Below are positions 1-62,365 of a stretch of DNA of 64,000 nt, in pieces. The stretch's first letter is position 1. Each line of letters starts with the position of its first letter. The DNA is from Stegostoma tigrinum (lineage: Eukaryota). Location of the stretch: NCBI RefSeq assembly GCF_030684315.1, contig NC_081393.1, positions 16,239,479 to 16,303,478 on the forward strand. The letters run 5' to 3'. A program made the position numbers and the translations under genes. The notes beneath the pieces were generated by a model. It had not been told where the DNA came from and searched no databases. It saw only the letters and a list, made by a program, of their open reading frames with translations.

Positions 1-456
1 CCGATTGTTTCATTTTTAATCAATCCTATTCGTGTACCTGATCTGAGAGAAGTTTTGAACTTCTAAACACATGCTTTGTTTTAAACCACTTTTGAACTGT
101 TCTGACCGTGTGATGAATTATCTGTAAGAGTGGCCGAACAGGACTGTTTGACACTTCAGATGTTTGTTCATTGATCTTGGTTTCAGATCATAACATCAAC
201 TGCTGGATTTTTTGAACCAGCCAAAACCAGCTGCTATAATGGCTATTGAGAACCTGAGTTCGTTGTCTACACTTTTCCTAAATGGGTGTGAAGTAACTTG
301 TAGCAATATCAATTTAGCAATTTAAATTGGGTGTTAAAATACAAACACGATTATGTGTCTTGTAAGCATTGTTCATATTAACCTGTGCCATTCAGTTCCT
401 GCTCTTGCTGGGCAAAATGCTACCTTTGAATGGTAACACAACATCATTACAAAACA

Positions 457-667
457 AAAATCAAAGTGTGAAGCTGGAGGAATACAGCAGGCCAGGCAGC
501 ATCAGAGGAACAGGAAAGTTGATGTTTCAGGTCGGGACCCTTTTTTTGAAGGGTCCCGACCTGAAACATCAGCTTTCCTGTTCCTCTGATGCCACCTGGC
601 CTGCTGTGTTCTTCCAGCTCCGCTTTGTTATTCTCTGACTCCAGGATCTACAATTCTTGCTATTTCT
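457..667. mobile_element. Fold-back mini-insertion of Neptune-like PLE terminal repeat (family A)
   Basis: ~80 bp inverted arms centred near 545 (gggaccctt-ttttg-aagggtccc) plus a one-sided tail. Flanked by direct repeat TTACAAAACA (447-456, 668-677). Confidence 0.85.
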
Positions 668-2439
668 TTACAAAACAGTTAATTTCTCTGTATTGAAACT
701 ATTTAAATTCTCTCTTTATGCTGACATCTCCTACTGTGACGCTATCTCATTTTACCAGTTAAACCAAAGGCTTCATTCTGATGCAGTTTTGGAAATGCTG
801 CCGTTTAAAAATAAGAGCAGCAAATGGCAGCAGTTAACGCTTTATTTCAGGCAGATATTGAATCCTTGAGCTCTGAAACTATGGAAAGTTTACTGGTATG
901 TTAAGGTGTAGTCAAGTAACAAAGGAATATGTGAAAGAAAACATGGCATATTGCTTGACAACATTAAGATCTTTGTACAACTATATTTTTTTAAGCATTC
1001 TTAAATAGGCAAAATAGGTTTCAGACTAAATAGAATTGTATATTTTATGAAATATTGGCATACAGTTTCTAAATAGAATATAACTATCAATTTTATTAGC
1101 CTTATCATCTCCAGTAGTATCTTTAACAGACCATCATGCTTGATTTATAACAATCCAGTACATACTGTATAAAAATATTTATTATATGTCATCACACGGT
1201 TCATGATGAAGGCTCAATTTGACTTCTGTATTTGATTGTGGAACAATTATTATATTTCCAAGTTGCAGGTGATACAAATCTTGGTTGGAATATGAGCTGT
1301 GAGGAGCATGTAAAAAGACTTTAAGGAGATCTAGGTAGGCTGTGAAAGTGGGCAAGAACATATTTAATATGAATGTAATGTGAATACAAATAGTAATTTA
1401 GAAGTACAAAATTTCTGTTTTACTCGTTCATGGGATGTGGTTGTTGCTGGCTAAACCAACATTTATTCGCATCTGTAATTGCCCAGAAGGCAGTTAAGAT
1501 TCAACCATGTTGCTGTGGTCTAGAGTCACATGTAGGCCAGACTGGATAAAGGTTGCAGAATTGCTTTTCCATTGGACATTGGTGAACCAGATGTGTTGTT
1601 ATGACGAATAACAGCGGTCATACATGGTTACTATTTGACTTGATTTCTATTCCAGATTTTCATTGAAATTAAATTTTACTATCTGCTGTGGTGGGATTTG
1701 AACCCAGGCCCCTAAAACATTAACATGGGGTTCTAGTTTACTGTCCTGTTAAATTTCCAAGACCATTGCTACCGCCATCCCATCAGTGTAGATGGAAAAC
1801 AAAACACACATTTGGCTGAAGCTTCTTGTCTTGCACTTGAGGCCAATTCACAGGAAATACCAGAACAACGGGAAAAGGACATTGAAACTATATGAGAGAA
1901 CAGTTCTAATTGGTAGGCAAGTGGGCTCTAATCGGTACAGGCATTACTAAGGAGAGTGCGCCAGTTAATGATTGTCATTTAAATACTACATTTTGTTTAA
2001 ATTGTTCAAAACAGTGTTCTGAGAAATAAACCAGAGAATGGTTATCACCTCTTCTGTTGTGTTGAGATAGGTGCAATACGTGTACGTTTTTTGTGTAAAC
2101 AACAGGGCCCTGTGTATTAATGTATATAGCTTCCCGGTGCATGCAAGTGCACCATACTACAATCCCAACCCTAAATTGAGTGTTAGCATAATACTTCCAA
2201 TGCTGAGGAGAATGCAGGCAAGTGTGAGGCTATCCAGTTTAGTAGGAAGAACAAAGGTGCAGTGTATTTCTTAAGTGGGACTGATTATAAAGTTTTCTCC
2301 TCAAAGAGACCATAGGTTGAGGTGTTTAAAAATCATTGAAAGCTAACATGTAGATGCAGCAAGCATTCCAGACGGCAACTGAAATACTGACCTTTAATCA
2401 TAAGATTTGGATTTGAATGTAGGTGCAAAGAAATATTAC

Positions 2440-2920
2440 TTCAGTTATATAGAACATTAGTGTGATTGCAGTTGTGGTTTTATTTACTGTTTTGATTGTT
2501 TGCCTGAAGGAGATACCTGCCATTGAGGTAGTGCAGTGGAAGTTTCCTAGATTTATTTCTGAGATGGTGAAACAGTCGAAAGAGAAGAGATTGAGGACAC
2601 TGGGCCTGTAATTGTTGGAATTTGGAAGCATGAGAGATGATCTCATGAAAAGATGGAATTTTTCAAAAGGGTTAATAAGCAGAATTGATTTGGAAAGGAT
2701 GTTTCCCCATGATTGAGGTATAGAATCAAGGGACACGGTCTCTGAATAAAAGGTAAATTGTTCAGAAATGAGATATGGTTAAACATTTTCACTCAGGAGT
2801 GAACCTTTAGAATTTCCTACTCCAGAGAGCTATGGAAATTCAGTCATTAAAATAGGTTCAATGAGCTAACGCCATCAAAGGCTATGGGGAAATTACAGAA
2901 ATGAGGCATTCAGGGAGATG
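2440..2920 (+). mobile_element. Old, degenerate CR1-type LINE 3' fragment
   Basis: Decayed ORF2 C-terminal-like sequence (gtgcagtggaagttt..., ttggaagcatgagagatgatctc...). Confidence 0.7.
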
Positions 2921-2924
2921 ATCT

Positions 2925-3227: not shown

Positions 3228-3883
3228 CCGATTAGGTTGTGGTTGGTTGGTTTGCGAAGCTGGTTCTTTGTTGTTTCACAGATGTTTCATTACCCTGCTG
3301 GGTAACATCATCAGCGCAGCCTCCGATAAAGTGCCTTTGTGTTTTCCTTCCTGGTTTTTAAACCCTGGAGTTGGTTGAGCTGGATCACCTCACTTGCGGT
3401 TTTCCTTTGCAATGGAGTGCACATAGGGTTGAGCTCGATGTCTTTTTGTCTTTGTTGATGGCTTTCTTAGTGGAGTATCAGGCTTCTAGGAGCCCCCATG
3501 CCTGTCTCTGCTTTGCTTGTCCCAGAATCTTGATGTGTCCCAATTGAATTGGTAGTTCTTATCCATATGGATAGAGATGAGTGGATGAGTGAGTATCGGT
3601 CGTGTCTTTTTGTAGCCAAAAGATGTTCGCGTACCCTTGTTATTAATTTCCTTCCTGTTTGTCCGATATATTGTTTGTCACAGTCTCTGCAGGGAATCTT
3701 GCATATGACATTTGGTCCTGTCCATAGTGGGGAGTGGATCTTTGGTTCAGGTGAGCAGGTGTCATAGGGTAAATGCGGGTTTGTGTGCTACTCTGATGCC
3801 CAGTGGTCCTAGGAGTCATGTGGTTAGTTCTGATGTGTTCTTGAAATAAGATAGCGTGATGAGTGTGTCGGGGTGCATGGTAT
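3228..3883 (-). mobile_element. Poseidon-like Penelope element, 3' part (linker, GIY-YIG endonuclease, terminal repeat with hammerhead motif)
   Basis: Minus strand reads MHPDTLITLSYFKNTSELTT*LLGPLGIRVAHKP, then NVICKIPCRDCDKQYIGQTGRKLITRVREH. Hammerhead-like motif at 3277-3318. Confidence 0.88.
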
Positions 3884-4429: not shown

Positions 4430-4690
4430 TGTGCGAAGCATTTAGAAAACAATGTTTGGATCAGACAGAGTCATCATAGAATTATGAAGGAGAACCATGC
4501 TTGAAAAATCTGTTGGATTTCTATGAAGATGGAACTTGTAGAGTTGACAAGGGGGAGCCAGTCAATATGGTATATTTGCACTTTCAGAAAGCATTTGACA
4601 AAGTCCCGCGTATCAGATTATTATGCAAGATTAAAGTGTGTTGGATTGGGGGAAGTGTATTGTGATGGAGAGAAAACTGGTTGGCAGAGA
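4430..4690 (+). mobile_element. Older CR1 RT fragment
   Basis: Degenerate RT-coding stretch (…ctttcagaaagcatttgacaaagtccc…). It duplicates RT motifs that recur in the young copy at 4850-5070. Confidence 0.75.
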
Positions 4691-7050: not shown

Positions 7051-9701
7051 CAGTTGGCTTCTTTCACCATGTCAGTCACCATTAGTTTTAAGAAGTCCCG
7101 CTTGCTCAAGAAACAGTTGGCAAGATTTTCCAAACTATTAGAACTAATTAGAAGGGCCTGTTTCCACACTGTGTAAGGATTCAAGATTCTGTGAACATTT
7201 CTGAACTATTTTTGTGTGTGCTGAAGATCTTGTTATTAGTTCAAAGTTTTTACAGGCTTAACATAACCTCTCTACTTTTTAATTCTGTTCCCACAGAAAT
7301 TGATCCTAGTGCTTTTTTTAAATGTATGTTATAAGTGTAGATTGTATATCACTATTTTAAGCAGCTAACAATATATACAGTTTTTTGAGCTATTTGTCCC
7401 ACTTAAATGGTTATTTTTACAACCAGCTTAGTCTTAACTATATTACAACTCAGTTGCCAAATACATACCTATTCTTCAAGTTTGTTAACAATTTTCTTCT
7501 TGTAATCATACACTAATTTTCCTTAGATCTGGTGTTAAGCTGTGGATTTGTTCTACCTTTTTTTTAAATATAAGCTGTATGGTGGCTTTTCACCAATGTA
7601 ATTCTCTATTCCTTTTCTTCATCACTTTTTATATATGTGTATTATCTCTCACCTGACTTTTAATATGTGCAGGGACTCGAATACTCTCATTGAGCATTTT
7701 TATGGGACAACAAGGTATAGAGCTGGAAGAACACAGCAGGCCGAGCAGGAATGCTGGTGTTTCGGGCCTAGACTCCTGTTCAGAAATGGGGAAGGGGAAA
7801 GGCATTCTGAAATAAATAGGGAGAGAGGGGGAGGCGGATAGAAGATGGATGGTGGAGAAGATAGGTGGAGAGGAGACAGTCAGGTCAAAGAGCCGGGGAT
7901 GGAGCCAGTAAAGGTGAATGTAGGTGGGGAGTTAGGGAGGAGATAGGTCAGTCCAGGGAGGACGGACAGGTCAAGTGGGGGAGGTGCGGAATGAGGTTAG
8001 GAGGTAGGGGATGGGGGTGGGGCTTGAGGTGGGAAGAGGGGATTGGTGAGAGGAAGGACAGGTTAGGGAGACGGTGACGAGCTGGGCTGGTTTTGGGATC
8101 CCATAGAGGGAGGGGAGATTTTGAAGCTTGTGAAATCCACTTTGATACCATTGGGCTGCAGTGTTCCCAAGTGGAATATGAGTTGCTGTTCCTGCAACCT
8201 TTGGGTGGCATTGTTTGGCATTGCAGGTGGTCCAGGATGGACATGTCGTCTGAGGAATGAGAGGGGAAGTTGAAATGGTTCGTGACTGGGAGGTGCAGTT
8301 GTTTATTGCAAACCGAGCATGGGAGTTCTGCAAAGCGGTCCCCAAGCCTCCGCTTGGTTGCCCCAATGTAGAGGAGGCCACAACGGGAACAGTGGATGCA
8401 GTATACCACATTTGCAGATGTACGGGTGAACATCTGCTTGATGTGGAAAGTCTTCCTGGGGCCTGGGATGGGGGTGAGGGGGGTGATGTCTAATGGCAAG
8501 TGTAGCACTTCCTGCGGTTGCGGGGAAAAGTGGAGTGGGGCTGGAGACGTGTATGGAGTGGACAGGGAGTCACAGAGAGAGTGGTCCCTCCAGAAAGCAG
8601 GTAAGGATGGGGAGGGAAAAATGTCTTTGGTGGTGGGGTCGGATTGCAGATGGCGGACATGTCGGAGGATGATGTGTTGGATCCGGAGGTTGGTGGGGTG
8701 ATACGTGAGGATGAGGGGGATTCTGTTTTGGTTGTTATTGCGGGGAGGGGGTCTGAGGGGTGAGTTGCGGGAAATGTGGAAGACACAGTCGAGGGCATTC
8801 TTGACCACCGAGGTGGGGGAATGTTGCGGTCCTTGAAAAATGAGGACATCTAAGAAGTATGGGAGTGGAATGCCTCATCCTGGGAGCAGATATAGCGGAG
8901 GCAAAGGAGTTGGGAATAGGGGATGGCATTTTTGCAGGAAGGTGAGTGGGCGGAGGTACATTCTCAGTAGCTGTGGGAGTCAGTGGGCTTGAAATGGACA
9001 TCGGTTTCTAGGTGGTTGCCAGAGGTGGAAACAGAGACACCTAGGATGGGGAGAGAGGTATTAGAGATGGTCCAGGGGAAGGGGTGGAAGGTGTTGGTGA
9101 AGTGGATGAGCTCCTCGTGAGAGCACGAGGTGGCGTTGATACAGTCATCGATGTAACGGAAGAAGAGGTGGGGTTTAGGGCCAGTGTAGCCACGGAAGAG
9201 GGATTGTTCCACGTAACCTCCAAAGATGCAGGCATAGCTTGGGTCCATGCTTGGGCCCTTTGTCTGTTGGAAGTGGGAGGAATTGAAAGAGAAGTTGTTG
9301 AGGGTGAGGACGAGTTCGGTTAAGTGGATGAGGGTGTCATTGGAGGGGTCTGGTCGGGCCTGTGGGACAGGAAGAAGCAGAGGGCCTTTCGGCCATCTGT
9401 TTGGGGAGTGCAGGTGTATAGGGACTGGATGTCTATGGTAGAGATGAGGTGTTGGGGACTGGAGAGTTGGAAGTTCTGGAGGAGGTAAAGGGCGTGGGTA
9501 ATGTCACCGACTTAGGTAGGGAGTTCCTGGACTATCAACATTTCAGTTGCTTTATGATCTTTAATGAAGAAATTTCTTTTATTTTTGGCATTTTTTATTT
9601 GTAGATATTTCTAATTAGTTTGGAAAATCTTGCCAACTGTTTCTTGAGCAAGAGGGACTTCTTAAAACTTATGATGACTGACATGTGAAAAAGGCCAATT
9701 G
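7051..9701. repeat. ~95 bp inverted repeat pair of non-TE-looking DNA (7051-7150 vs 9609-9701)
   Basis: ttgctcaagaaacagttggcaagattttccaaacta is the reverse complement of tagtttggaaaatcttgccaactgtttcttgagcaa; similarity extends to both sides. Confidence 0.9.
7705..9532 (-). mobile_element. Neptune-like Penelope element (family A), 5'-truncated and frameshifted
   Basis: RT fragments (FFRYIDDCI), Cys-rich linker (RRKCYTC), GIY-YIG (NVVYCIHCSRCGLLYIGATKRRLGDRFAE), C-rich 3' region, decayed hammerhead near 7760-7785. Confidence 0.93.
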
Positions 9702-15470: not shown

Positions 15471-18261
15471 GCCTCAACTAAAATCCTGAGGTTGTGAGAG
15501 TAGCGCAACAAATGCAAGCATTTTTCTGTTTTTCCTTTCATTCGGATCAGCACTATTATGTTTTCTGACTGAAAAATTTAAGCTCAATTTCTCATTTTTA
15601 AAAAAAAGTGTAATTTTTCCTTTGTTCCCATATTACTGCCCATACTCAGGAATGGTGTTAGATCCCGATCTTCCCAATAACTTTTAACATTACGCCACTG
15701 AAAGTCCCAGAAACTCCAGAATTCTTAGCTCATCTCTAGGTATCCCCTCTCAAATATTATATCATATAGTCACACAAAATCTCATCATTCATTACCAACG
15801 CTCTTAAATGTTGACTCTTGCTGCGAGCCAAGATGTCTGTCCCAGTGCCTCACTTAAAACTACTCCATCACTGTCCCTGCCCCCTCTCTTCCACCCTGTC
15901 ATTTTCATGCTCTCCATATCTCTCCTAACAGTATTGCACTTTCGATAAGCAACTTCTCTTGTTGCCATAAGAAATAGGAAGAGAAGTAGGTCATTCAGCC
16001 CCTCGAGAGCTCTGCCATTCATTAGATTATGGCTGATACAACATTTTCCCAAGTTCACTTTCCTGCCATTTCTCCCTGTAACCCTTGATTCGCCAGTTCT
16101 CACCACTGCAACTAGCCTCTCCCTTCCATTGCGTTGTGGCTATTTTTCTGCTAGCCGTCCAGTTTGTCTCAGGTTTTAAAATTTTAATGCATATGTTTTG
16201 AACTATAACCTGAAGTTGATGGAGCAGAGATACAATTCACATTTATGTAGCCTGAACCTGCAAACTATCTGTACAGTTTAAGTAATGTGAGGACCATGAA
16301 TCTGTAGTCATTCTAATATACCCAATTTTGAACAAAGCAAGGGTATTGTGGAGTTTGTTATTGCACAAATAATCCAGAGAATTTGAACTAAAACACCAAT
16401 ATGCTAATTGAGAATTTGAATTCAGTGTCAACAAAAAGGCTAGAACTGTATAATGTTGTCACTAAAAATGACTATAAAGCTGTTGAATGGTCATAAGGAC
16501 CCAGCTGAATACTCCTTCTTTTGTGACAAAACCTGCTTCTTTACCTGATCTTAGCCTCTATGTAGTTGACTGTTAACTGCTAGCAGCAGTGGCTCAGCAG
16601 GACATTCAGTTGCGTCAAACCCCAGGCAAAATATGGACGATAAATAGTAGCCTTGTCAACAGCACACAGGTCTGAGAATGAGCAGTACAATTTGAGATCT
16701 ACACACCTGCCAATGTGTGGAATTGTTTAAAAAGATGAGTTTTAGTTGAATAATGGCACACCTTAAAATTTTATCACAGAATTCATTCTGTTTTCTAACT
16801 GTGTTATCCTATTATAGAATAGAATTCTATATACAATCCTATAATTCTATATAAAATAGAATTAATTCCTGTTTTGTCTGAAAATGAAACTTTTTGGAAT
16901 TGCTTGTATGAAGTTATAAATAAGGAAGTTAAATCCTGTATTGTTTTTCCTACTCATCAGAATTTTTATTTGGTACAAATTGTTTAAGCTGAGTCGAGGG
17001 TAATTTATCTCCAGCGTCTGCAGTTCCCATTATCTCTGATCACAATATTACAGTTCACTGTTAGTTTTCATTGTCTGCTTCAGTTTTTATATATATAATC
17101 CAGTTACTTTAGGCTGTTCTTTGTGGAAAAGAAAATTGTTTATGAACAACAGCTCCAGGAATTAATTGTGGCAGTGCATCTAGTTTATAAATTCTTTTGA
17201 AATGCAGTTGAGTTGGTTTTGATTCACAAAACTAAAATTACTTGTTGTTTCAATCTAGCATATAAATTTTAGGAAAGATTATATTCCCTTCATCTCATGG
17301 GAATTCCCATATTGTATGTCAATCTTTGTCATCACTTAAGACGCAGATAACCTGCTCTCAGGCTTATGTTTTTAGTCATCTAAATGTTTCCTGGGAATTA
17401 AACCTTAATTACCAGAATGCCACCCCTTTTCATCTGCCTACTCCTACATATTCCGCTCAATCTTGTCCTTGCCTTACCAGAAGACAGTGACTTCTATTCA
17501 GAGTTGGATCTGGGTTGGAATTTGTCTCGCATCACCATTCTTCATGTGTGAATCCAGACTATGGGCTGTTCGACCTTCAGTTGTAAATGGGAACTTGTAT
17601 TGCCTGATTTTTAACTGTCTCTTCCATGGGCACAGGCTAATTGGATTGCTTCTACGTCCACAACAATGGAAGGCAGATGACTTGGCCCAGAAGTTGCTGG
17701 TGTCTGGGGCCTTCCTGGCATCCATTTACTACTCCTTGTGATATTCCTGCTCAGATTCAAAATACATTTTGGGAGCTGATTCCCAGTCCCTCAGCAGCAT
17801 GGCAGGTATCACCACATATGAATGTACAAAGCATAGCAAGAACAGAAGTAGACCTTCCAGCTTTTTGAGCCTGTTCAACCATTCACCAAGATCATGGCAG
17901 ATTTATTTCTGTCTTGGATTCCACATTCTCACTGACCCCTGATGATATTCGATTTTTATTAGATGAGCGAATCATATTCCTCTCCCTTAAAAATATTCTA
18001 TAACCCCATTTCCATTGCTTTCCGAGGCTAGGTGTTCCACTGTTGCATAACCCTCTGAGAGAAAAAAAATTCTCAGGATCTCTGCCTAAAAGGGAGACAC
18101 CTAATTTTAAAACAGTGCCCCGTGACGTGAAGGAGTGCCCCTTTCTTACATATTGCTACAGAAACATGCTGTGTTATTTCAATTCCAGGGCAGTTGGTAA
18201 AATATGAAATGAGACACTAATAGTTTATTTGATGATAGGTATATTCACAAAATTCAGCATT

Positions 18262-21529: not shown

Positions 21530-22520
21530 AACAAAAGAAATGCAGATGCTGAAGATCTGAAACAAAAATAAATTGCTGAAAAACTCAGCAGGTCTGGCAG
21601 CATCTGTGATGAGAATGTAGAGTTATCATTTCAAGTCCAATGACCCATCTTTAGAACTGATAGCAGCTAGGAAAATGTGTTTATGCTGATATTTTCTCCC
21701 TCCTCACAATGTAAAGCTCCAGACACAGCAACACATGTTGCCAAATGAAGCAGCAATTTACCTGCACTTACAGGAGCAGAAAGAAAAAGTTGGAGAATGG
21801 CACTGATGTACAGAAGATGAAGGGAGAAAGTTGATGAAAGCTGTACAGAAAGAAAGGCAGAGTGTTGGAAAGTGGGAGTAGTGTTGATTTAGTGTATTTT
21901 CTGCTCACAATGTGGTCTCCAAGGAAGACAAAAGACAGACTGGGTGACGGCTTTGCAGAACATCTACATTCTGTCTGGAAAAAATGACCTTGAGGTTCCA
22001 GTTCCCTGCCACTTCAACTCACCACTGTGCTTCCTGACCAACATTTCTATCTTGGGCCTGCTGCAGTGCTCCAGTGAGGCTCAACCACAAGGTGGAACAA
22101 TAGCATCTCATCTTCTGCTTGGGGATACTGCAGTCTCCAGGACCCGGGATAGAGTTCAGTAATTTTAGAGCCTGACTACCTCCTTCCATATCCTTTACCA
22201 ACCCCACAAATCAGGTTTGCTATGATATAGGCTGCTTTCAGCACAGCCAACCTATTTTCACCTACTTATTGTCCCCATGATGAGCTTTCCTCCTTCCAAG
22301 GCTTACTCTCTGTCATTGTTTTGTCTGCCTAAATTACTTTCTCTCGCTTTGTGCTCCAACTTCATCTGTCTGCTCCCTAGCAACTCTGACCCACTTCCCC
22401 CTCCCCCACTGTTATCTAACTACTGTCAGTTCTGAAGTAAGGTTGCTGGACTCGGTGTTAACTGTGTTGTCTGTCCACAGATGCTGCCAGACTGACGAAT
22501 TTCTCCAGCAATTTCTGCTG
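21530..22520 (+). mobile_element. Older Penelope element (family C) with inverted 5' terminal-repeat piece and GIY-YIG remnant
   Basis: cagactgggtgacggctttgcagaacatct (RLGDGFAEH). Inverted termini: ctcagcaggtctggcagcatctgtg vs cacagatgctgccagactga. Confidence 0.75.
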
Positions 22521-34660: not shown

Positions 34661-34838
34661 GAAGCACCAAATAAGATCCATTCAATAATAAGAATAAAAA
34701 GTGTCAGTGTGCTTTCTGTGAGGTGCTTATACACCTTACTGTGGAATATCTTTCTAAGAAATAAAGCTTTATCCTATCTTGGCAATCTATCACTTCGTAA
34801 CCATCCATCACTGCTGTCAGAAAATTATAAGTAAATGC

Positions 34839-38200: not shown

Positions 38201-38233
38201 AGTGGTTTCAAATTACATTTCTCCTAATATTCA

Positions 38234-39434
38234 GAGATAATAAGAACTGCAGATGCTGGACAATCTGAGATAACAAAGCATACAGCTGGATGAACAAAGC
38301 TGGCCAAGCAGCATCTTAGGAGCACGAAAGCTGACATTTCGGATCGAAGATGGATAGCGGAGAAGATAGGTGGAGAGGAGATAGACAAGTTAAAGAGGCA
38401 GGAGTGGAGCCAGTAGAAGTGAGTGTAGGTGGGGAAGTAGGGAGGCGATGGGTCAGTCCGGGGAGGATGGACAGGTCAAGAGGGCGGGATTAGGTTAGCA
38501 GGTAGGAAATGGGGGTGCGGCTTGAAGTGGTAGGTGGGGATAGGTGAGAGGACAAACAGGTAAGGGAGACGGGGACAAGCTGGGCTGGTTTTGGGATGCG
38601 TTAGTGGGAGGGGAGGTATTGAAGCTTGTGAAATCCTCATTGATACCATTGGTCTGCAGGGTTCCTAAGCGGAATACGAGTTGCTGTTCCTGCAACCTTA
38701 AGGTGGCATCGTTGTGGCACTGCAGAAGGCCCAGGATGGACATGTCCTCTAAGGAATGGGAGGAGGAGTTGAAATGGTTTGCAACTGAGAGGTGCAATTG
38801 TTTATTGCAAACTGAGCATAGGTGTTCTGCAAAGCAGTCCCCAAGCCTCCGCTTGGTTTCCCCGATGTAGAGGAGGCCACAACGGCTACAGCGGATGCAG
38901 TATACTGCATTGGCAGATGTGCAGGTGAACATCTGCTTGATGTGGAAAGTCTTCCTGGGGATGAGGGTGAGGGAGGAGGTATGGTATCACTGTGGATTTC
39001 ACAAGCTTCAAAATCTCCCCTCCACCGACTGCATCCCAAAACCAGCCCAGCTCATCCCCGCCTTCCTAACCTGTTCTTCCTCACACCTGTCCCCTGCTCC
39101 CACCTCAAGCCCCACTCCCATTTCCTACCTGCAAACCACATCCCGCCCCCTTGAGCTGTCCGCCCTCCCCGGACTGACCCATCCCCTCCCTACCTCCCTA
39201 CCTACACTCACCTCTACTGGCTCCATCCCTGCCTCTTTAACTTGTCTATCTCCTGTCCACCTATCTTCTCCTCTATCCATCTTCAATCTGCCTCCCCCTC
39301 TCTCCCTATTTATTTCAGAACCCTCTCCCCCTCTCCCATTTCTGATAAAGGGTCTAGGCCCGAAACGTCAGCTTTTGTGCTCCTAAGATGCTGCTTGGCC
39401 TGTTGTGTTCATCCAGCTCTACGCTTTGTTATCT
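38234..39434. mobile_element. Neptune-like PLE in inverted head-to-head arrangement
   Basis: Minus-strand GIY-YIG and terminal repeat (38234-38978) joined to a plus-strand copy (38979-39434). Flanks tctcctaatattca / tctcctaaagttca. Hammerhead at 39342 has CUGAUAA (G8 changed to A). Confidence 0.9.
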
Positions 39435-39679
39435 CCTAAAGTTCACATTAATTCATTTCGCAAAATTACATGGTATTTATTCCATGTGTATGAGGACTAA
39501 TTTCTAGCCTCAATAATCAAATCGGACTGGATTAATTTAAGATATCTGGTTGGAAAGGGCGAGTTGGACTGAAGGGTATGTTTCTGTGCTGTATATCTTT
39601 ATGATCTAATTAAAAAGCTTTTTCTTAGAGTTTCATCTAACATAGTCACAGTAATCCATACTAGGGCAGAAAAACCACA

Positions 39680-40760: not shown

Positions 40761-40889
40761 GTTATAACTCTGGAGATAACTCAGCAAATCTGCAAGCACC
40801 AGTTGGGAGAGAATCACGTTTAACATTTCAAGACCAATACAATGATTCTTCAAGCTGAAACATAAAGCAGCTAATTTGATTTTCACCAT

Positions 40890-44283: not shown

Positions 44284-44665
44284 CACTTGAGTAAAAGAAA
44301 AATACTGTGGATGCTTGAAACCTAAAACGAAAAAAGAGAATGCTGAAGAAAGTCATTTCAGAGATAGTAGGAACTGCAGATGCTGGAGAATCTGAGATAA
44401 CAAGGTTTTCTGAAGAAGGGTCTCGGCCCAAAACGTCAGCTTTCCTGCTTCCCTGATGCTGCTTGGCTGGCTGTGTTCATCCAGCTCTACACCTTGTTAT
44501 CTCTGCTAAAGAAAGTCAACAGGTCATGTAGCATCAATGGAGAGAGAGACAATGTTAACATTTCTAGTGTCGAGTGTGACTGTTCTTCAGAAGGAAAGTG
44601 AAGACATACTGGACTCAAAATATTAACTGTGGTTGCCAGACCTGCTGAGTTTCTCCAATGTTTTT
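44284..44665. mobile_element. Family C PLE fold-back insertion containing a nested family A mini-insertion (44356-44503)
   Basis: Outer direct repeat TGGCTTCAACT (44273-44283, 44666-44676). Inner repeat TGCT(G/A)AAGAAAGTCA (44341-44355, 44504-44518). Hammerhead at 44410 has GAAA changed to AAAA. Confidence 0.85.
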
Positions 44666-45684
44666 TGGCTTCAACTTGCTGTTAAATTGCAAGTTCAAGC
44701 TGCATGTTAAATTGCAGTGAGCATTCCATTGTGTTTTTGCAATAAGCTGAGAGATATAAGCCAGATTTAAACACTTTGGTTTGCATTGCATCGTATCTTT
44801 TCATTAATAGACATGTTATTTTATTCCACGACTTGTGAAATTTGCAGTCTGATTTGCAAATCAGCAGTCATGCCTTGACAAAAACTAAAGTTGTTCACAA
44901 CCAACATAAAATAACGAATAAAGTTACATGAATACACTCAAAACTATCAAAATAAATACAAAGAATGAAGCATTTATTGCCTGATCTTGAACTATGTGTG
45001 CTGAGCTTCTTTTTCTGCCTCTAGCACCTGTAACTAGGTTGGGAAAAGTACGCAAGAGAGGACTAAAATAGTCAACCAGTTTTAGTCATTTTAAAAAATT
45101 TCTTCCTCTTTGGGGTTGTCCATCGCCAACTCAGCAACTTTCATCTGTTCTGTATTAATATATTTTACAAATCTACCTCACGGTTGCACTGACTCAAGGC
45201 CACTTGCACATCAGGTTTCAAAGCCAGTTTCCACTAGTTGTTCCCACTGACTTTGATAATCTTTCTGCATCTGATTGTAAAGAATCACATGGGGAGACTT
45301 CAATCACAAAAATGCAGCGTTGATATTTATTGAAATGTTATTTCGTTACTGTGCTGTAGTTGCCCTATAGACTAAATAATGGCACTTTGTGAGTGGTACC
45401 CTTCAATGTGCCTAGGTAACTGCAAAAATCATGACGGGCAACTTCCAGGGAAGTTCTAAAAAGGGGTCATTGGACTTGAATCATAATTCTGTTTTCCGTC
45501 CTCAGGTGCTGCCATACTTGCTGAGTTTCTCCGGAATTTCTGTTTTTATGTTAAGAAAGTGGCATTCTTTTCTGAGATACAGACGTGATGGGCAAAATGA
45601 GATTCCTCCTGTGCGTTATTATTCTCTCATCTCTGGAGCCATTGTGTTTCACCAACTGTTTCTTTGCCTTTCCTTCTTCAACAG

Positions 45685-51367: not shown

Positions 51368-51564
51368 GATAACAAGGAGTGGAGCTGGATGAACGCAGCA
51401 GGCCAGGCAGCATCAGAGGACCAGGAAGGCTGACGTTTTCTGAAGAAGGGTCCAGATCCGAAACGTCAGTTATCCTGCTTCTCTGATGCTGCCTGGCCTG
51501 CTGTGTTCATCCAGCGCCACTCCTTGTTATCCCAGACTCCAGCATCCTACTATCTCTGAGTCAA
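51368..51564. mobile_element. Family A PLE fold-back mini-insertion just upstream of POLB exon 13
   Basis: ~70 bp inverted arms plus tail. TATTGTTTTAA duplicated at 51357-51367 and 51565-51575. Confidence 0.9.
51438..51469 (+). ncRNA. Minimal hammerhead ribozyme motif, intact core, weak stem I
   Basis: CUGAAGA-A-GGGUC-ca-GAUCC-GAAA-CG-UC; predicted cleavage after 51467. Confidence 0.65.
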
Positions 51565-53784: not shown

Positions 53785-54707
53785 AATTTGTGTTTTGTTT
53801 AATTATCAGATTTATGACATAAGCGTGATACAAACAATGAATGTGGCACTTGCAACAAATACATGCTTTTAATTAGACTTAAAATTATTTAAAATTTGCA
53901 TTTGTAGTAGACTTCATTATTGTCGACGAAAAATCAAAACATTGAAGGCCTGTAGTATTTTGATCTTAGTCCGATACATTTGACAGTGAAAAGAATCTTC
54001 TTTTGACAAAATCAGTTCAAAACTTTCACATTTACCAATGGCCTATCTTTATTTTAAAAAATTCTATTCAGACTGCAGACCAAAGACAAGTAATGCTGTA
54101 ATGGCCTCTTTAAATTCTCAATCAAGGTGTGAACTCAGAATTCCATGCTTAGGTAATTGTTGCTTTTGAAACTGAGCCAAGCATTCATAATGACATAACG
54201 ATCGTCTTTGGGGAAATATCAAACACTACCAGTTGTTGCTACTTTTATCTAAGCTGTCAGTCAAAACAGTCCACCAGAAAGGTATTTTAGAAACTGTTTC
54301 AATGACAGCTACAGCTTGTTTTTTTCTTAAAACTGATTGAGCACAGCATTGAAAAAAAACTCCAGACCAAGTCAGTGTACTAGCCATATTTGCCCTTCAA
54401 GTATGTTTACATCTGCTCCAAGAGATTGTATTTCTGCAAAGTGTCGATCTGAAGAAGAATTATATTGGACTCAAAACGTTGACTCTGTTCTTCCCTCCAC
54501 AGATGTAGCCAGACCTGCTGAGTTGTCTGCCACTTTCTGGTTTAACTTAAGATCTCCAGCACCTGCAATACTTTGTTTTTTGTCTGGTTTAAATGGCCCC
54601 TGCTGAGTTTGTGTTTCCTTACTTGTGTGAATCACACCCTGCTTTCCAGCTGTGCAAAAGTCTGACCGACCTGTCTACCCTTCATTAGTATGGTTGGCCT
54701 GGTCATT

Positions 54708-54806: not shown

Positions 54807-56160
54807 TGGCCTGGTCATTATTTACAGGTTGGGAATAACTTGTACCTTCTTCCTATTTGAACGCCTGGTCTTCCCTTGAACCTTGAGGAACAGAATGACT
54901 GAAGCTTGTTGTGGGGCTGAACTTATGACGGGTCATGTGATCCTCTTCATCTCTCCATTTCATCTGAGAGAGACAGTGCCAAGACATAAGAATGCTGCAA
55001 ACCTCACTTGTGACAAGGGGCATAGACCTCTCAAAAGTGGGATTCAGATTCTCCATCTCACAGAAAGGCTGAAAGGAAGTTTTGCAGACAGCGTTGATAC
55101 TAGATAACAAAGTGTAGAGCTGGATGAACACAGGCCAAGCAGCATCTTAGGAGCACAAAAGCTGATGTTTCAGGCCTAGACCCTTTGTTAATTTGAAACC
55201 TCAGTGTGATGTGTGTTTATCAGAGGTATCCAAGGATATGGGGCAATGCTGGGTTTGTGCATTTAGGTCACGTCGGCTGTCATCTCATTGAATATCAGCA
55301 GAACAGATTCAAGGAGCTAAATGACCAACTCCTATTCCAATGATCTTACTCATGCTGAGAAATACTAGAAGTCAGAATTAGGTACACTTCCGCAGTGAAA
55401 TGTTAATTGTCATAATCTTGCACAAGCTACTCCATACTGCCTTGAGCTTTCATTAAAAACTATCTCATTTGTTATTTAATATTTCTGTTTTTGATAGTTT
55501 AGTGTGCATGATAAAAGGTAGAACTATCTTTCAAAATTTCTGTACTACAAAAACAGCTTACCGTGGAAATACATGTAAGACCTTAATTAGACTATTGCCG
55601 TGGTTTTCCAGAGTTAGAATATTAATCGCTGCTTTTATTCACAACATGTTAGCCAATTTTAGTTTGGCTTTCCTACCGAAAAAGGATTGAACTAATTCAT
55701 GAAAATATGTTAAGCGTCTCAGAGTTCTACCTCTGGTACCTCATACAGCAATTACATTTAACAGATAAATCAGAAGCATGAGTGTCACATGCTAACAGCT
55801 TGCCAGTGTTCAACGAAATGAGAAACAAGCAGGCAGAGTGAAGAAATTGTTTCCAGCATAGACTGCAAAATGAGCAGAAGGTGAGAGTAGAATGTTTGAC
55901 CATATGTTTATTCCTCATGTTCAGTCATTGGACTTCAGATGGTAGTTCAGAAGACTGCAATTGTGAAAAGGTAGATTTGAGAAATTTTTGTAAATTTGGG
56001 GAGGCTGAAGGGGTTAAAAAATCAGCTGTGAGGACTCAATGTTCCTGCCTGGTACTCCGGTGGTTAGTTTCCCTGACCCAAGAAATCACAGCTTCTTCAT
56101 TATTCTTTTATTCAAATAAATCTTGTCGTGAATGCTTTAAACTTGTTCTACTGTACTGTG

Positions 56161-56291
56161 GTCAGAAGTCACATGACACCAGGTTATAACCCAACAGGGT
56201 ATGATTTCAGATAAACCTGTCGGACTATAACCTAGCATCATGTCACTTCTGACTTTGTCTGCCCAAGCCCAACACTGGCACATCCACATGA
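56161..56291. mobile_element. Fold-back mini-insertion of a fourth repeat family with the same architecture
   Basis: Arms gtcagaagtcacatgacaccaggttata / tataacctagcatcatgtcacttctgac plus tail. Flanks CT(A/G)CTGTACTGTG (56148-56160, 56292-56304). Confidence 0.75.
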
Positions 56292-57487
56292 CTGCTGTAC
56301 TGTGTTATGTTTTTGATAATGGTGTAAACATTGTGAGGTGGGGAGTAAGAAATTACTGGTTTTATAGAGGTCATATTGGTGCCGTATTTCAAGTTTTAAC
56401 GTAATTGCAAAGAGTCAAGATCATGCTGAAATTTCCAGAATTTATCCTCCTATATAAATGAATTCCTTGTCAACCACTTTTCTAGTGTCAAGTTAGAATT
56501 GAGCTTCCAATTTTGCACTGATGACAGGCTTTGAAATCTGTCTTCAACCTCACTTGTGAGGTTTTCGTAAAAATGTAAAAATCAAAGAACTGTTCTTTGA
56601 AGAGAAAGTTGAGGAAGATAGTGATTCACAGTCACTATAAATCTTAAGCCTATCCAGAACCTTGACATTAGACTTCTGTCAGATTTCAGTTAGCTCGATG
56701 GTTAGGGTGTTAATGGTGACAGACACACCCTGACCTGGCTGAGTTTAGATTTAGGGCCTGTAATGTTGTCGTGAACCCTTGGCATAAGCTGTGTTTCAGC
56801 AACACGTTCATAATCACAATGATACCTAGGGAAGAGAAGAGCACAAGAAACATGCAAGCAAGATCAGGGGTTTATTGCAGGTTTTTACTTTTAAATTAGC
56901 ATTTTTTAAAAAAGTAAAAACTATTTGAGTATCTATTTGTTACAAAAATAACATCTTGCTTACAATAATAAACGAGTAGACTGTGACCAGGGAATAGGAA
57001 ACCTTGGAGTAGATTTTGAGCTTTCTTACAGTTGGTGGGACAGGGAAACTAGAAATTGCAGATGATAATTTGTGAAGACTCATTCATCCCGATTAGTTGT
57101 TATACTGGCGTCACAGGCAGGTGAAATAGTTTTCTACCAATTTACAACAGGCGTACAATATCCCAACTTTGGGAAACCACCAATGCTACCAGCAAGGATT
57201 TGCAAGTATTGTAAGAATAAATGGACTTCTCTCTTTTGGTCCTTTTCACAATTCAGCACGTATAGATATCTTTGCTTCCATATTTGATTACTTTTTGGAT
57301 GCAGAAGTGCTCCAGCAGCTACCAAAAAATTGGAAGTCTCCGTAGTCAAACTGTGAATACTTACCTTTTGTGTGAAAAATGTCAGAGATTTGTGCCAAAG
57401 ATTGGAGGTAGAATCGCAAAGAGGTACAAAATTCTGGCACTGCAGAACATACTGAGCTGCATCCAGACAATGTTGCAGTTTTATTTA

Positions 57488-57677
57488 AAAACTGAAAAAA
57501 CTGCGGATGCTTTAAATCAGAGACAAAAACAAAGTTGCTGATAAAGCCTAGCAGGTCTGGCAGCATCTATGAAGGCAAAAACAGAGTTAACATTTTGGGT
57601 CTGGTGACCCTTCCTCTGCTTTTTCCTTCACAGATGTTGCCAGACCTACTGGGATTTTCCAGCAACTTTGTTTTTGA
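57488..57677. mobile_element. Family C PLE fold-back mini-insertion
   Basis: Inverted arms (aggtctggcagcatct / agatgttgccagacct). Flanks TGCA(G/T)TTTTATTTA (57474-57487, 57678-57691). Confidence 0.8.
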
Positions 57678-57817
57678 TGCATTTTTATTTACCCATGATT
57701 GATATGTCAGGTTTTCGGAACTTTGTCATCTCTGAAATGCACCAGTATTAAGATACAGCTTTGAGAAAGTGTTTCTTTCTGAGCTCATAGCTCTTTGGTT
57801 TCAACAAACCAAACTTA

Positions 57818-59259: not shown

Positions 59260-59482
59260 AGCAAGTTTTGAGAAGATTTTTAGCTCAGGTTGAGGTTCTG
59301 GATGTGAGTTTGCTCGCTGAGCTGGAAGTTTAGTTTTCAGACATTTCGTCACCATTCTAGGTAACATCATCAGTGAGCCTCCGATGAAGCTTCATCGGAG
59401 GCTCACTGATGATGTTACCTAGAATGGTGACGAAACGTCTGAAAACTAACCTTCCAGCTCAGCAAGCAAACTCACATCCAGA
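59260..59482. mobile_element. Poseidon-type fold-back mini-insertion: loop-less 93 bp palindrome with two opposed hammerheads
   Basis: 59297-59389 vs 59390-59482, 3 mismatches, centre GAAG|CTTC. Flanks AGATT(C/T)TCAGAATT (59246-59259, 59480-59493). Confidence 0.92.
59403..59442 (+). ncRNA. Minimal type I hammerhead ribozyme motif, intact core
   Basis: UCA-CUGAUGA-U-GUUACC-uagaau-GGUGAC-GAAA-CG-UC-UGA; predicted cleavage after 59439. Confidence 0.8.
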
Positions 59483-60949
59483 TTTTCAGAATTCTATGTC
59501 AATCCTCACTCCATTGACCTGGACAGTCCTCACCTACCCTACATTCTCACTTATCACCATCCCTTAACCTAATGCATAGTTGTGATCATCCCACAACTGT
59601 GGAACCTATTTCCATCAATTCATGCTTTCCTTCTACATTCCAAGTCTTGAACATCGGGTAGATAAGGAAAATCTTCCGAACTCAAAGATCTTTTGAGGCC
59701 AATTGCCTGCTGCAAAGATAACTTGAAGAAGCTGGGACTTCTTCCTGAAGAGAAGTCTGAAAGGAGAATTGAAATAATTTTGTTAGAATTTTTCAATGTT
59801 GAGAGTGAGCTGAATAGAGTAAACTGATGTGCAAAAGAAGCAAGGGTGATATTAAAACAAATGTTTTCATTCAGCAAGAAGTTAGGAGATAGGCTGCACT
59901 GCTTGGAAGTGTGGTTGGAGACAGGTTCAGCTGAGACAGTCAAGAAGGCTTTCAGTGATTATTTGGATTGGAAAGGTGTGTTGGGGTGTGGTGAAAAGAC
60001 AATATTGGTAATGATGTTATCACTTGGTAAAGATGCCCATTTGAAAAGCTGGTTCATGCACAGCAGGCCAGTCACCTTTTGCATCAAGCAATTGTGACAT
60101 AGCAATTCTATGAACGATTTCCTCTTCTACTTTATCTAACTTCAAAATTGTCTGGCACAGAGTCTTTCAGGAGAGGAGTGCATTTTTTGGATTTTAATGT
60201 GGCAGACATCTGACCAAATCACAGGCATGATTTTGTCTCTGGAGTTCTGCATCTGGAGGACTGAATCTTAAAATTTACCCCTCACACTCATAATTAGCTG
60301 ATCATCTCTGTGAAATTCAGGCAAATAGTTAGAGGTGTTGCCTTGTCCTGCCTCTATTTTACTTTTTATTAAATGTTATTTTCTTAGCTTCCTTACTTTT
60401 GTCCAGCAAGCACTGTGTTGCCAGGACTTCTCAAAGATACAAGCTTAGGTTAAAGTATCTAGCCCTGTGATCGTATCAGTTATGCTTAAAAGTTCCTTGA
60501 ATGTATGAACAAGGAGCAAGAAGAGGCTACTCGATCGTCCCATCTGCTCTGCTATTATATAAGATCATGGATAATTTGATTTTAACCTCAACTCTACATT
60601 CCTGCATATCCCTGATCATTTTTCCTCCCCTTGGTAATAAAAATTCTCACCATCTCTCATTTAAACATATTTTAAAATTCTGCATCCACTGCATTTGGAG
60701 GAAGGAAATTCCTCAGACTCTCAATCCTCTGAGGGAAAAGTGTTTCCTCATCTCTGTTTTGGGGAGAAAGCAGGAAAGTGAAGTTGGGATTATCAGATCA
60801 GTCATGATCTCATTGAATGACAGAGCAGACTCAGTGAGCTGAATGGCCTATTTCTACTGTGTCTTATGGTCTTAAGGAGCTAACTCTTTTTTTCAAACTA
60901 TGATCTCTAGTTCTAGATTCTCCCACAAGAGAAAACATGTTTTCAAAAT

Positions 60950-61175
60950 TCATAACTCTGCAGAAGCGGGTACTCGGTCACTGAGTCATCCTTTATTTAC
61001 ACAGGAGAGTCCTTGACACTGATCCAGTTTCCCCAGCACCAGCTTTCAGAGTAAACAGAACCTCTGACACTTCTCTTCTTATCAGCCCAGGTTCCCTGAT
61101 TGGACCAGATTAACAGCCCCAATCAGGGAACTCATTCTCTGAGGTCTACCTGGCTGACCTCATTACAATCACCAA
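60950..61175. mobile_element. Possible solo LTR inserted in an old CR1 fragment (60500-61550)
   Basis: The surrounding minus-strand CR1 sequence is interrupted by an unrelated ~225 bp block with a minus-strand ATAAA signal and CCAAT-like motifs. Confidence 0.4.
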
Positions 61176-62169
61176 ACCCTCAAACTCTTTCATGTTTCAT
61201 TTAATTCACCTCTGAATCTTCTGCATTCCAGAAGATACAGGCCAAATCTGTCTATCTTTCCTCATAAGGCCATCTACTCTTTACAGGTTTTAATCCAGTA
61301 AACCTCTAAACTGCTTCCAACACATTGACATCCTTCACTAAGTACTGAGACCAGTACTATACACACTACTTTAAATGTGGTCTTACCAATGCAATGTTTA
61401 ACTGAAGCATAATCTCCCTACTCTTGAATTCAATTCCCTCACCAAACAATATGACATTCTATTAGCTTTCCTGATTCCTTACTTTACCAGTACACAAACC
61501 TTCTGTGGTTCATACATTAGGACACGCAGATTTCTCTGCGTCTCAATTCACCTCAGAATATGTTTCTGCTGTCAGCTGAATTGATAGTGTACATTTCTGA
61601 TGCTTAAGATGGACTCAATGAATTAGATGTCTTGATTGAGCCTTTCATATCCTTCATTCTTCAACCAATTCCATGGTTCTGTATGACAGCAATGAATCAT
61701 ACTTTAGTTGTAATCGGGAGGTCTAGGAGTTGGCTGTCATGATGGGAGCATTTTGAAACACTTTTAAAGGATGTGAAAGTAATCCAGTCAACTTTAGTTG
61801 CCACTAACTATATAGCTAGAGTTCTGCATCAAGATTTTGGGACTGCAAGCTCTGAGGCAGCAAAGGCTGCCATATAACTTGGACTAGAGACTCATGTCAG
61901 CGATTGGGCGCTTTTCTGATGGTGGGCATGATGTAACAGAAAGATCTTTTGAGGCCTGATGCCTGATGCAAACAAACATGCCTGCAGTTTAAAAATTCCC
62001 ACCCTGCTCAACCTTTCTCCTGGTTGAAGTCCACCCCAGCCTCCTCTTGTTGTATCCTGCAAAAAGCACAATGTCTGAATGTTTTTTATTCTCACCCAAT
62101 GTTCATAGTTTCCCAAAAGGCTCATTGAGCAACTTTCACAATGGAAAATGGGGTGCTGTACTTTACTCA

Positions 62170-62365
62170 AAAATAAAAGCAAAATCATGCAGATGCTGGA
62201 GGACTGAAATGAAACCATAAATTGCTGGAGAAACTTAGCAAATCTGGCAGCATTTTGGAAACAAACAGTTAACATTTCGAGTCCAATATGACACTTTTTC
62301 AAATGGTACATCTCTCCTCAGCTGCTGCCAAACCCACTGGTCTACTCCAGCAATTCTGTTTTATT
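62170..62365. mobile_element. Degenerate family C PLE fold-back fragment
   Basis: aattgctggagaaacttagcaaatctggcagc vs gctgccaaacccactggtctactccagcaatt. Confidence 0.65.

What the first reader, a model, noticed from the sequence alone, without database searches (positions are those of the whole stretch)
447..62365. Multi-family system of tiny direct-repeat-flanked fold-back elements, many carrying hammerhead ribozyme motifs
Seen: about ten insertions, mostly 130-380 bp, share one architecture: direct repeat, inverted partial arm, terminal-repeat arm plus a 30-50 nt tail, direct repeat. They are at 457-667, 34362-34491, 38234-39434, 44284-44665, 44356-44503, 51368-51564, 56161-56291, 57488-57677, 59260-59482 and 62170-62365 (the last lacks a clear flanking repeat). 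Flanking repeats are 10-16 bp. At least four sequence families are involved, and three match termini of coding PLEs in this window. Established: PLEs carry minimal hammerheads in their pseudo-LTRs and often have inverted termini. Inference: these are either abortive two-ended PLE integrations or self-propagating non-autonomous ribozyme elements (retrozyme/MITE-like). At about one per 6 kb here, they would be a large, under-annotated class of hairpin and ribozyme RNA in shark introns.
Basis: partly seen in the sequence, partly recalled or inferred. Interest (0 to 1): 0.85.

Follow-up and report, generated by a model that had tools for sequence, protein, structure and literature searches.

The report
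Truncated two-armed Penelope retrotransposon insertions
The small repeat-flanked hairpin elements are real, but they look like the known dead-end debris of Penelope-like retrotransposon integration in a shark genome, not a new self-copying ribozyme element.

Summary
Nine of the ten listed elements have exact 8-16 bp flanking duplications. All ten have two inverted arms, and a 35-45 nt "tail" sits on only one arm.

The architecture matches what is already published for Penelope-like elements (PLEs): strong 5' truncation, an adjacent inverted 5'-truncated copy, a one-sided 30-40 bp tail, variable target-site duplications and minimal hammerheads.
- Families A and B match the 3' ends of coding PLE fragments in the window (reverse transcriptase plus GIY-YIG endonuclease).
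- Families C and D have no coding partner here.
- Only three of the ten elements (34362, 51368, 59260) keep an intact hammerhead core, and Rfam finds no hammerhead.
- There are no tandem ribozyme units, so these are not retrozymes.
- Every internal junction is different, and the two arms of a fold-back share private substitutions.
- Both outer ends fall on the two reverse-transcription start sites.
- Inner ends cluster at the 5' edge of the hammerhead.

Best reading (about 0.72): single integration events in which both ends of the DNA break primed cDNA synthesis.

Unchecked first-reader notes list the same kind of element on other pieces of this genome.

The parts
457..667 (.). Family A fold-back. 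Inverted arm 457-550 without tail. Sense arm 548-631 plus tail 632-667. TSD TTACAAAACA at 447-456 and 668-677.
   Evidence: I4, 87%; hairpin z -26. The CUGANGA box is mutated.
34362..34491 (-). Family A. One sense arm on the minus strand (34361-34459) with an intact min-hammerhead core (34422-34453), joined to an inverted tail-only arm (34461-34491). TSD TGGGAAAAATCACCAA, 16 bp.
38231..39435 (.). Family A 1.2-kb fold-back. Antisense arm with tail (38231 to about 38976) includes a GIY-YIG-coding fragment (38498-38986, minus strand). Sense arm without tail runs from about 38981 to 39435. Weak TSD TCTCCTAA (8 bp, 3-nt filler on the left). Core is CUGAUAA (G8 mutated to A).
   Evidence: (I1, I5)
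44284..44665 (.). Family B old fold-back with tail on the left arm, interrupted by the family A element at 44356-44508. TSD TGGCTTCAACT, 11 bp.
44356..44508 (+). Family A. Inverted arm made of tail plus 13 nt (44356-44404), joined to a sense arm from -3 to site 1 (44405-44508). TSD AAGAAAGTCA. Core G12 mutated to A.
51368..51564 (.). Family A fold-back. Short arm 51368-51438 (inner end +21, no tail). Long arm 51437-51531 (inner end -3) plus tail 51532-51564. Intact min-hammerhead core at 51440-51471 (+). TSD TATTGTTTTAA.
   Evidence: I6; z -14
56161..56294 (.). Family D fold-back with arms of about 39 nt (74% identical) and a 39-nt tail on the right. TSD CTGTACTGTG. No hammerhead and no other copy in the window, so PLE origin is inferred from architecture only.
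57488..57682 (.). Family B fold-back with tail on the left arm (57488-57523). Degenerate hammerhead relic on the minus strand. TSD TTTTATTTA, 9 bp.
   Evidence: I7; z -14
59260..59485 (.). Family C young perfect palindrome. Tail 59260-59296. Arms 59297-59389 and 59390-59482 are 97% complementary with zero spacer. Min-hammerhead cores at 59336-59373 (-) and 59406-59443 (+). TSD TCAGAATT (8 exact, 10 with one mismatch).
   Evidence: I2; z -23
62170..62365 (.). Family B old fold-back with tail on the left arm. No TSD.
21534..22519 (.). Family B long fold-back. Antisense arm with tail from 21534 to about 21679. Long sense arm to 22519 containing an endonuclease-like ORF (21893-22159), 39% identical to the GIY-YIG region of the whale-shark PLE protein P0001.
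   Evidence: (I8)
7706..9503 (-). Family A coding PLE fragment with RT (YIDD) and endonuclease region. 3' end at 7706, no tail.
   Evidence: 77% identical to P0001
24090..25598 (+). Family A coding PLE fragment with a GIY-YIG domain (24870-25106). 3' end at 25598 (…GTTATCT), no tail.
55102..55198 (-). Family A single arm (-3 to site 1). No tail, no TSD.
54447..54582 (+). Family B single arm with tail. No TSD.
45452..45549 (+). Family B single arm (-4 to site 1). No tail, no TSD.
40770..40858 (-). Family B single arm (-6 to site 1). No TSD.
16992..17040 (+). Family A tail-only fragment.
34567..34656 (+). Family C single copy with an intact min-hammerhead core (34584-34621). Homology continues upstream past the axis point of the 59260 element.
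3234..3331 (-). Family C single copy with a min-hammerhead core (3277-3314, minus strand).

Best explanation
These are dead-on-arrival by-products of Penelope-like element (PLE) retrotransposition in a shark genome (nearest protein relatives are in whale shark and zebra shark).

Proposed mechanism:
1. Each element is one integration event at a staggered double-strand break, which gives the 8-16 bp duplication around the whole unit.
2. Both DNA ends prime reverse transcription on PLE RNA at the element's internal start sites. One cDNA starts at site 1, right after GTTATCT(C) in family A. The other starts 35-45 nt further downstream at site 2, which produces the one-sided tail.
3. Both cDNAs run toward the RNA 5' end and are joined head-to-head. 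This gives two inverted arms of the PLE 3'/pLTR end.
4. The hammerhead is present only because it lies 70-95 nt upstream of site 1.
5. Many arms stop at one place, the 5' edge of the hammerhead. I take this to be a discrete 5' end of the template RNA (a run-off product). That would explain the recurrent 200-230 bp palindromes without any self-copying.

What is shown: architecture, duplications, homology to coding PLEs, start-site mapping, junction diversity, inner-end clustering.

What is inferred: two-ended priming, the RNA 5' end, and that the copies are immobile.
For: 1. PLE origin.
- Family A arms match the 3' ends of coding fragments at 7706-9503(-) and 24090-25598(+). These fragments carry a GIY-YIG domain.
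- They are 70-77% identical to whale-shark protein P0001, which has RT plus GIY-YIG.
- Family B's long fold-back holds an endonuclease-like ORF 39% identical to P0001.
- The long arm of element 38231-39435 contains endonuclease coding sequence.

2. One event per element. Exact 8-16 bp duplications flank the whole two-armed unit in 9 of 10 elements.

3. Outer ends.
- In family A every no-tail arm ends within 0-6 nt after GTTATCT(C).
- Every tailed arm ends about 37 nt further on, at …TATCTCTGA.
- Exactly one arm has the tail in all 11 two-armed elements. Among the six found blind by the inverted-repeat search, p<=0.016.
- This matches the published tail, defined as the sequence between two internal RT start sites, and the finding that the PLE protein cleaves and extends both DNA strands in vitro (PMC11167929). 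It also matches the published scheme of an inverted 5'-truncated copy with a one-sided 30-40 bp tail (PMC8557442, Fig. 2).

4. Junctions.
- All inner junctions differ.
- The arms of a fold-back are each other's nearest or tied-nearest relatives and share private substitutions.

5. Inner-end clustering. 12 of 19 short-arm inner ends lie within -10 to +5 of C3 of CUGANGA (binomial about 6e-7 for a post hoc window).

6. Precedent. Opposite-strand min-hammerhead pairs 100-700 bp apart were already read as truncated PLEs in Schistosoma (PMC4209133).
Against: - There is no genome-wide census. Only about 20 copies in 64 kb were compared, so a propagating subfamily could be missed.
- Inner ends clustering at one point, and recurrent palindromes of about 200 bp, would also be expected from unit-wise copying of a master element.
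- Families C and D have no coding partner in this window.
- The published in vitro work saw no start-site difference between the two strands, whereas here the two arms always differ.
- The RNA 5' end at the hammerhead edge is inferred, not observed.
Confidence: 0.72

Rival explanations
1. Self-propagating non-autonomous mini-PLEs (SINE-, MITE- or retrozyme-like). A fold-back or roughly 100-nt unit is transcribed and re-inserted as a unit by PLE proteins acting in trans.
For: - Short arms have a discrete inner boundary at the hammerhead edge, giving a recurrent unit size of about 97 nt per arm.
- Single-arm units of the same extent exist (45452-45549, 40770-40858, 55102-55198).
- First-reader notes on other pieces of this genome report recurring palindromes of about 200 bp (unchecked).
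- Vertebrate non-LTR retrozymes are proposed to be non-autonomous PLE derivatives (bioRxiv 10.64898/2026.07.22.740005).
Against: - No two copies in the window share a junction.
- The arms of one element are closest to each other, not to the corresponding arm of another element.
- Both outer ends coincide with RT start sites. Unit copying would need transcription to begin exactly at the first base of the inverted arm.
- The copies end at the RT start site, so they lack the downstream RNA that the only studied PLE needs for template use (PMC11167929; extrapolated to sharks).
- There are no tandem units, and most ribozyme cores are mutated.
Confidence: 0.13
2. Snap-back variant of the same process. 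One cDNA folds back on itself and self-primes second-strand synthesis, giving a palindrome, rather than two independently primed cDNAs.
For: - Element 59260-59485 is a perfect palindrome with a zero-nt spacer.
- Element 457-667 has only a 6-nt spacer.
Against: - Self-copying would duplicate the tail onto both arms, yet the tail is always on one arm only.
- Direct (not inverted) target duplications flank the units.
- Unequal arms (51368, 57488, 62170, 38231, 21534) need two different stop points.
Confidence: 0.08
3. Two independent insertions: a second PLE end inserted in opposite orientation into or beside an older copy (self-targeting). Alternatively, MITEs of a DNA transposon.
For: - PLEs are reported to nick their own pLTR (PMC11167929).
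- Real nesting exists in the window (44356-44508 inside 44284-44665).
Against: - Duplications flank the complete two-armed unit, not one arm.
- Arms share private substitutions.
- For the MITE reading: duplication length varies from 8 to 16 bp, the ends are asymmetric because of the tail, and the arms are homologous to a retroelement 3' end.
Confidence: 0.04

Closest known systems
Complex insertions of Penelope-like elements (Evgen'ev & Arkhipova 2005; Arkhipova 2006; Craig et al. 2021, PMC8557442 Fig. 2; Frangieh et al. 2024, PMC11167929)
   Same: Strong 5' truncation, an adjacent inverted 5'-truncated copy, a 30-40 bp tail at only one end, a hammerhead in the terminal repeat, a GIY-YIG/RT coding partner and variable target duplications.
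   Different: Here the truncation is extreme (arms of 0-100 nt), so the whole insertion is a 130-230 bp hairpin. The families are shark-specific. Arm inner ends cluster at the hammerhead's 5' edge, which I did not find stated in the papers read.
Widespread single and opposite-strand minimal hammerheads of truncated PLEs (Cervera & De la Pena 2014, PMC4209133)
   Same: - Core of CUGANGA, one unpaired base, helix II closed by G10.1-C11.1, then GAAA.
- Palindromic ACGU in place of helix III, and a short helix I.
- Pairs of motifs 100-700 bp apart on opposite strands, read as truncated PLEs.
   Different: That work was done in Schistosoma and other genomes. No shark families, duplications or tail mapping were described there.
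Metazoan non-LTR retrozymes (Cervera & De la Pena 2020, PMC7229834; bioRxiv 10.64898/2026.07.22.740005)
   Same: Small hammerhead-bearing non-coding sequences related to PLE terminal repeats.
   Different: Retrozymes are direct tandem repeats of 150-450 bp units with canonical type I hammerheads, expressed as circular RNAs. Here there are no tandem units, the ribozymes are minimal or mutated, and the two copies are on opposite strands.
L1 twin priming
   Same: Both ends of the target break prime cDNA synthesis in one event, producing an inverted segment flanked by a target duplication.
   Different: In L1 the second priming site is internal and variable, so the segments do not overlap. Here both primings use the same terminal start region, so the segments overlap as an inverted repeat.

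Membership tests
Penelope-like element insertion (truncated, two-armed) | Sequence homology to the 3' end of an element encoding a PLE-type RT plus a GIY-YIG endonuclease | tested here: met
   - Family A.
- Family B: (endonuclease-like ORF, 39% identity).
- Families C and D: no coding partner found in the window.
Penelope-like element insertion (truncated, two-armed) | Adjacent inverted 5'-truncated copy | tested here: met
Penelope-like element insertion (truncated, two-armed) | 30-40 bp tail present at only one end | tested here: met
   11 of 11 two-armed elements have a tail of about 35-45 nt on exactly one arm.
Penelope-like element insertion (truncated, two-armed) | Target-site duplication of variable length around the whole unit | tested here: met
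   9 of 10 elements, 8-16 bp exact.
Penelope-like element insertion (truncated, two-armed) | Minimal hammerhead in the terminal repeat | tested here: met
   8 strict cores against 0.92 expected, of which 6 lie in families A and C and 2 look like chance matches (46218-46250, 62289-62321). Family B has relics only and family D has none.
Non-LTR retrozyme | Direct tandem repeats of 150-450 bp units, each carrying a hammerhead | tested here: not met
   No such arrays. No two same-strand cores are near each other.
Non-LTR retrozyme | Canonical type I hammerhead with helix III and loop-loop contacts | tested here: not met
   No Rfam hammerhead family matched at gathering score or at E<=10.
Non-LTR retrozyme | Expression as small circular RNA | not testable with these tools
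   No RNA run holds the stretch.
MITE (DNA-transposon derivative) | Fixed-length target duplication and symmetric terminal inverted repeats | tested here: not met
   Duplications vary from 8 to 16 bp, and the ends are asymmetric because of the tail.
Catalytically competent hammerhead ribozyme | Intact core (C3-A9, G12-A14, U16.1-H17), helix II, a helix I, and a partner copy on the same strand for dimeric helix III | tested here: inconclusive
   - The core and helix II are intact in three listed elements.
- Helix I is at most 2-3 bp, and its 5' strand is mostly missing because arms start at -3.
- The second copy is on the opposite strand.
- In RNA the motif is buried in a hairpin of -139 to -169 kcal/mol.
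- Cleavage was not assayed.

The most novel reading that the evidence does not exclude
The mini-elements may be a natural in vivo record of the PLE integration mechanism. Three regularities, if they hold genome-wide, would show that two-ended target-primed reverse transcription with asymmetric start-site choice and run-off at a defined RNA 5' end is the rule for PLEs:
- both ends of the break prime cDNA, always from different start sites (a tail on exactly one arm);
- arms stop at a discrete RNA 5' end at the hammerhead's 5' edge;
- clean duplications occur only when two arms are present.

These features are not established in the papers I read. A further possibility is that a minority of the hairpins are transcribed in host genes and processed into small RNAs.
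Probability: 0.3. Interest if true: 0.5.

Novelty: new member of a known kind. Interest (0 to 1): 0.3.

Why it matters
For genome annotation, these hairpins should be labelled as truncated Penelope-like insertions. They are not a new ribozyme or MITE class. In this window PLE-derived pieces occur about once per 3.5 kb.

For transposon biology, their regular anatomy gives a cheap genome-wide readout of how PLEs integrate, a mechanism so far studied for one lizard element in vitro. The relevant features are the two start sites, the tail on one arm only, inner ends at the hammerhead edge, and duplications only in two-armed copies.

For RNA biology, transcribed fold-backs would form long perfect hairpins rather than active ribozymes.

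Tried and rejected
- Rfam at gathering score and at E<=10 found no hammerhead family. The sub-threshold microRNA-precursor hits on the fold-backs are generic hairpin matches.
- The look-up of sequencing runs listed the source species and two related species as DNA contigs and found no RNA holder.
I worked beside them.
- An exact 31-mer scan for family A in metagenome contigs found nothing.
- The first paper search was swamped by hammerhead-shark papers.
- The RT ORFs at 4505-6027, 27462-30665 and 39717-40761 were considered as PLE partners. I rejected this because their best solved relatives are R2 and LINE-1 ORF2.
- A search for a coding partner of family C near 3234-3400 found nothing.
- Retrozyme and MITE memberships were tested and not met.

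Full report
**Observation**

A blind inverted-repeat search recovered the fold-backs at:
- 459-632
- 38267-39435 (two nested arm pairs)
- 51368-51531
- 57524-57676
- 59297-59482, which is 97% complementary with zero spacer

Exact direct repeats of 8-16 bp abut nine of the ten elements. For random position pairs the 99th percentile is 8 and the maximum 9. Element 62170-62365 has none.

Elements 34362-34491 and 44356-44508 are not hairpins. Each is a roughly 100-nt arm joined to an inverted tail. The second is nested in 44284-44665 with its own duplication.

BLAST and nhmmer within the window sort the copies into four families:
- A: 9 places
- B: 8 places, distantly related to A
- C: 3 places
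- D: 1 place

**What they are made of**

Family A arms are the 3' end of a coding element.
- The fragments 7706-9503(-) and 24090-25598(+) continue upstream into ORF pieces with a GIY-YIG domain.
- They also contain an RT stretch 77% identical to a whale-shark protein (P0001) that carries RVT_1 plus GIY-YIG, the canonical PLE architecture.
- The 1.2-kb element 38231-39435 contains endonuclease coding sequence in its longer arm.
- Family B's long fold-back at 21534-22519 holds an endonuclease-like ORF 39% identical to P0001.
- Families C and D have no coding partner in the window.
- The other RT ORFs (4505-6027, 27462-30665, 39717-40761) resemble R2/LINE-1 enzymes and are not PLEs.
- A second, divergent PLE-type RT lies at 6118-6978(-).

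**Hammerheads**

The terminal 100 nt of families A and C carry the PLE-type minimal hammerhead described by Cervera & De la Pena (PMC4209133). Its parts are:
- CUGANGA
- one unpaired base
- helix II closed by G10.1-C11.1 (4 bp in A, 6 bp in C)
- GAAA
- a palindromic ACGU in place of helix III
- a cut site after GUC

A strict scan found 8 cores against 0.92 +/- 1.0 in shuffles.
- Six hits belong to families A and C. Three listed elements carry them: 34362, 51368 and 59260 (59260 on both strands).
- The other two hits (46218-46250 and 62289-62321) look like chance matches.
- Elements 457, 38231 and 44356 have single inactivating core changes.
- Family B has only relics, and family D has none.
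- Rfam reports no hammerhead even at E<=10. This is expected for motifs without helix III.

As RNA, the fold-backs 457, 51368, 57488 and 59260 form near-perfect hairpins (z -14 to -26). These pair the ribozyme strand with its complement. The second copy is on the opposite strand, so the dimeric active form is not available.

No tandem units exist.

**Anatomy that bears on mechanism**

1. Outer ends.
   - In family A every no-tail arm ends within 0-6 nt after GTTATCT(C).
   - Every tailed arm ends about 37 nt further on, at …TATCTCTGA. Both sites follow a TATCTC motif.
   - Families B, C and D show the same two-site pattern.
   - Exactly one arm carries the tail in all 11 two-armed elements. 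For the six found blind, p<=0.016.
2. Inner ends.
   - 12 of 19 short arms start within -10 to +5 of C3 of the CUGANGA box. In family A the values are -2, +5, -6, -3, -3 and -3.
   - The remaining seven start at -25, -22, +21, +27, +38, +81 and +94 (a tail-only arm).
   - The long arms, which are not among the 19, run into coding sequence.
3. Every inner junction is different.
4. The two arms of a fold-back share private substitutions and are each other's nearest or tied-nearest relatives.
5. Clean duplications occur in 9 of 10 two-armed elements. They occur in 0 of 4 short single-armed copies (Fisher p=0.005).

**Comparison with what is known**

- Craig et al. (PMC8557442, Fig. 2 and text) describe PLE insertions as highly 5'-truncated. 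They often have an inverted 5'-truncated copy adjacent, and a 30-40 bp tail at only one end.
- Frangieh et al. (PMC11167929) show for a lizard PLE that reverse transcription starts at two adjacent internal sites. The tail is the sequence between them. The protein cleaves and extends both DNA strands. The template needs RNA downstream of the start sites.
- Cervera & De la Pena noted opposite-strand minimal hammerheads 100-700 bp apart and read them as truncated PLEs.

**Mechanism proposed**

Each element is one integration event.
1. Both ends of a staggered break prime cDNA on PLE RNA, one at site 1 and one at site 2.
2. Both cDNAs run toward the RNA 5' end and are joined head-to-head. Microhomology is seen at some junctions, for example TTTC at 51437 and the near-palindromic TTCTGAA at the arm start.
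3. The clustering of inner ends suggests run-off at a discrete RNA 5' end at the hammerhead's 5' edge. This explains recurrent 200-230 bp palindromes without self-copying.
4. Because the copies end at the start sites, they lack the downstream RNA needed for another round (extrapolated from the lizard element). They should therefore be immobile.

Two-ended priming, the RNA 5' end and immobility are inferences.

**Rivals and limits**

Self-propagation is not supported by the roughly 20 copies here, but it could not be tested genome-wide.
- A metagenome scan found nothing.
- No RNA run holds the stretch, so expression, cleavage and small RNAs are untested.
- Intronic location is unverified.
- First-reader notes on other pieces of this genome list the same kind of mini-element. 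They are unchecked and not independent evidence.

**Verdict**

This is a real, well-described feature and a new shark member of a known kind. It is not a new class of ribozyme element. Its modest interest lies in the regularities listed above, which could inform the PLE integration mechanism.

Noticed in passing
window 11336-11506: 171-bp near-perfect palindrome (83-nt arms, 99% complementary, 5-nt loop; hairpin z -28). It has no similarity to the PLE families and no flanking repeat longer than 5 bp. Its sub-threshold Rfam hits to plant microRNA precursors look like generic hairpin matches.
   Followed up: partly
window 4505-6027(+), 27462-30665(-), 39717-40761(-), 34835-35149(+), 31654-32614(-): Several copies of one LINE-like retrotransposon family. 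Its RT is closest to R2 and LINE-1 ORF2 among solved structures. Other first-reader notes in this genome speak of Tx1 LINEs inserted into Penelope hammerheads. Family C hammerhead copies lie near two of these LINE pieces (3234-3331 and 34567-34656), but I did not map the junctions.
   Followed up: partly
window 6118-6978(-): Fragment of a second, divergent PLE-type RT (RYVDD motif, 27% identical to the whale-shark PLE protein). No terminus could be assigned to it.
   Followed up: partly
window 45452-45549, 40770-40858, 54447-54582, 55102-55198: Short single-armed PLE ends have no detectable target duplication, whereas 9 of 10 two-armed elements have one (Fisher p=0.005). This could mean that one-ended insertions are resolved differently, for example with target deletion.
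   Followed up: partly
window 38231-38268, 51532-51564, 44356-44392 (family A tails): Both family A start sites follow a TATCTC motif (GTTATCTC|AGA… and …CTATCTCTGA|). The tail contains a small CAGAT…ATCTG stem.
   Followed up: no
window 34320-34570: Element 34362-34491 sits inside a family C sequence. That sequence carries an internal direct repeat of a motif of about 60 nt (TTTAAAA[AG]CCAGG[TC]GGGAAAA…), just upstream of the family C hammerhead.
   Followed up: no
Nothing was laid, and I worked beside them.
   Followed up: no
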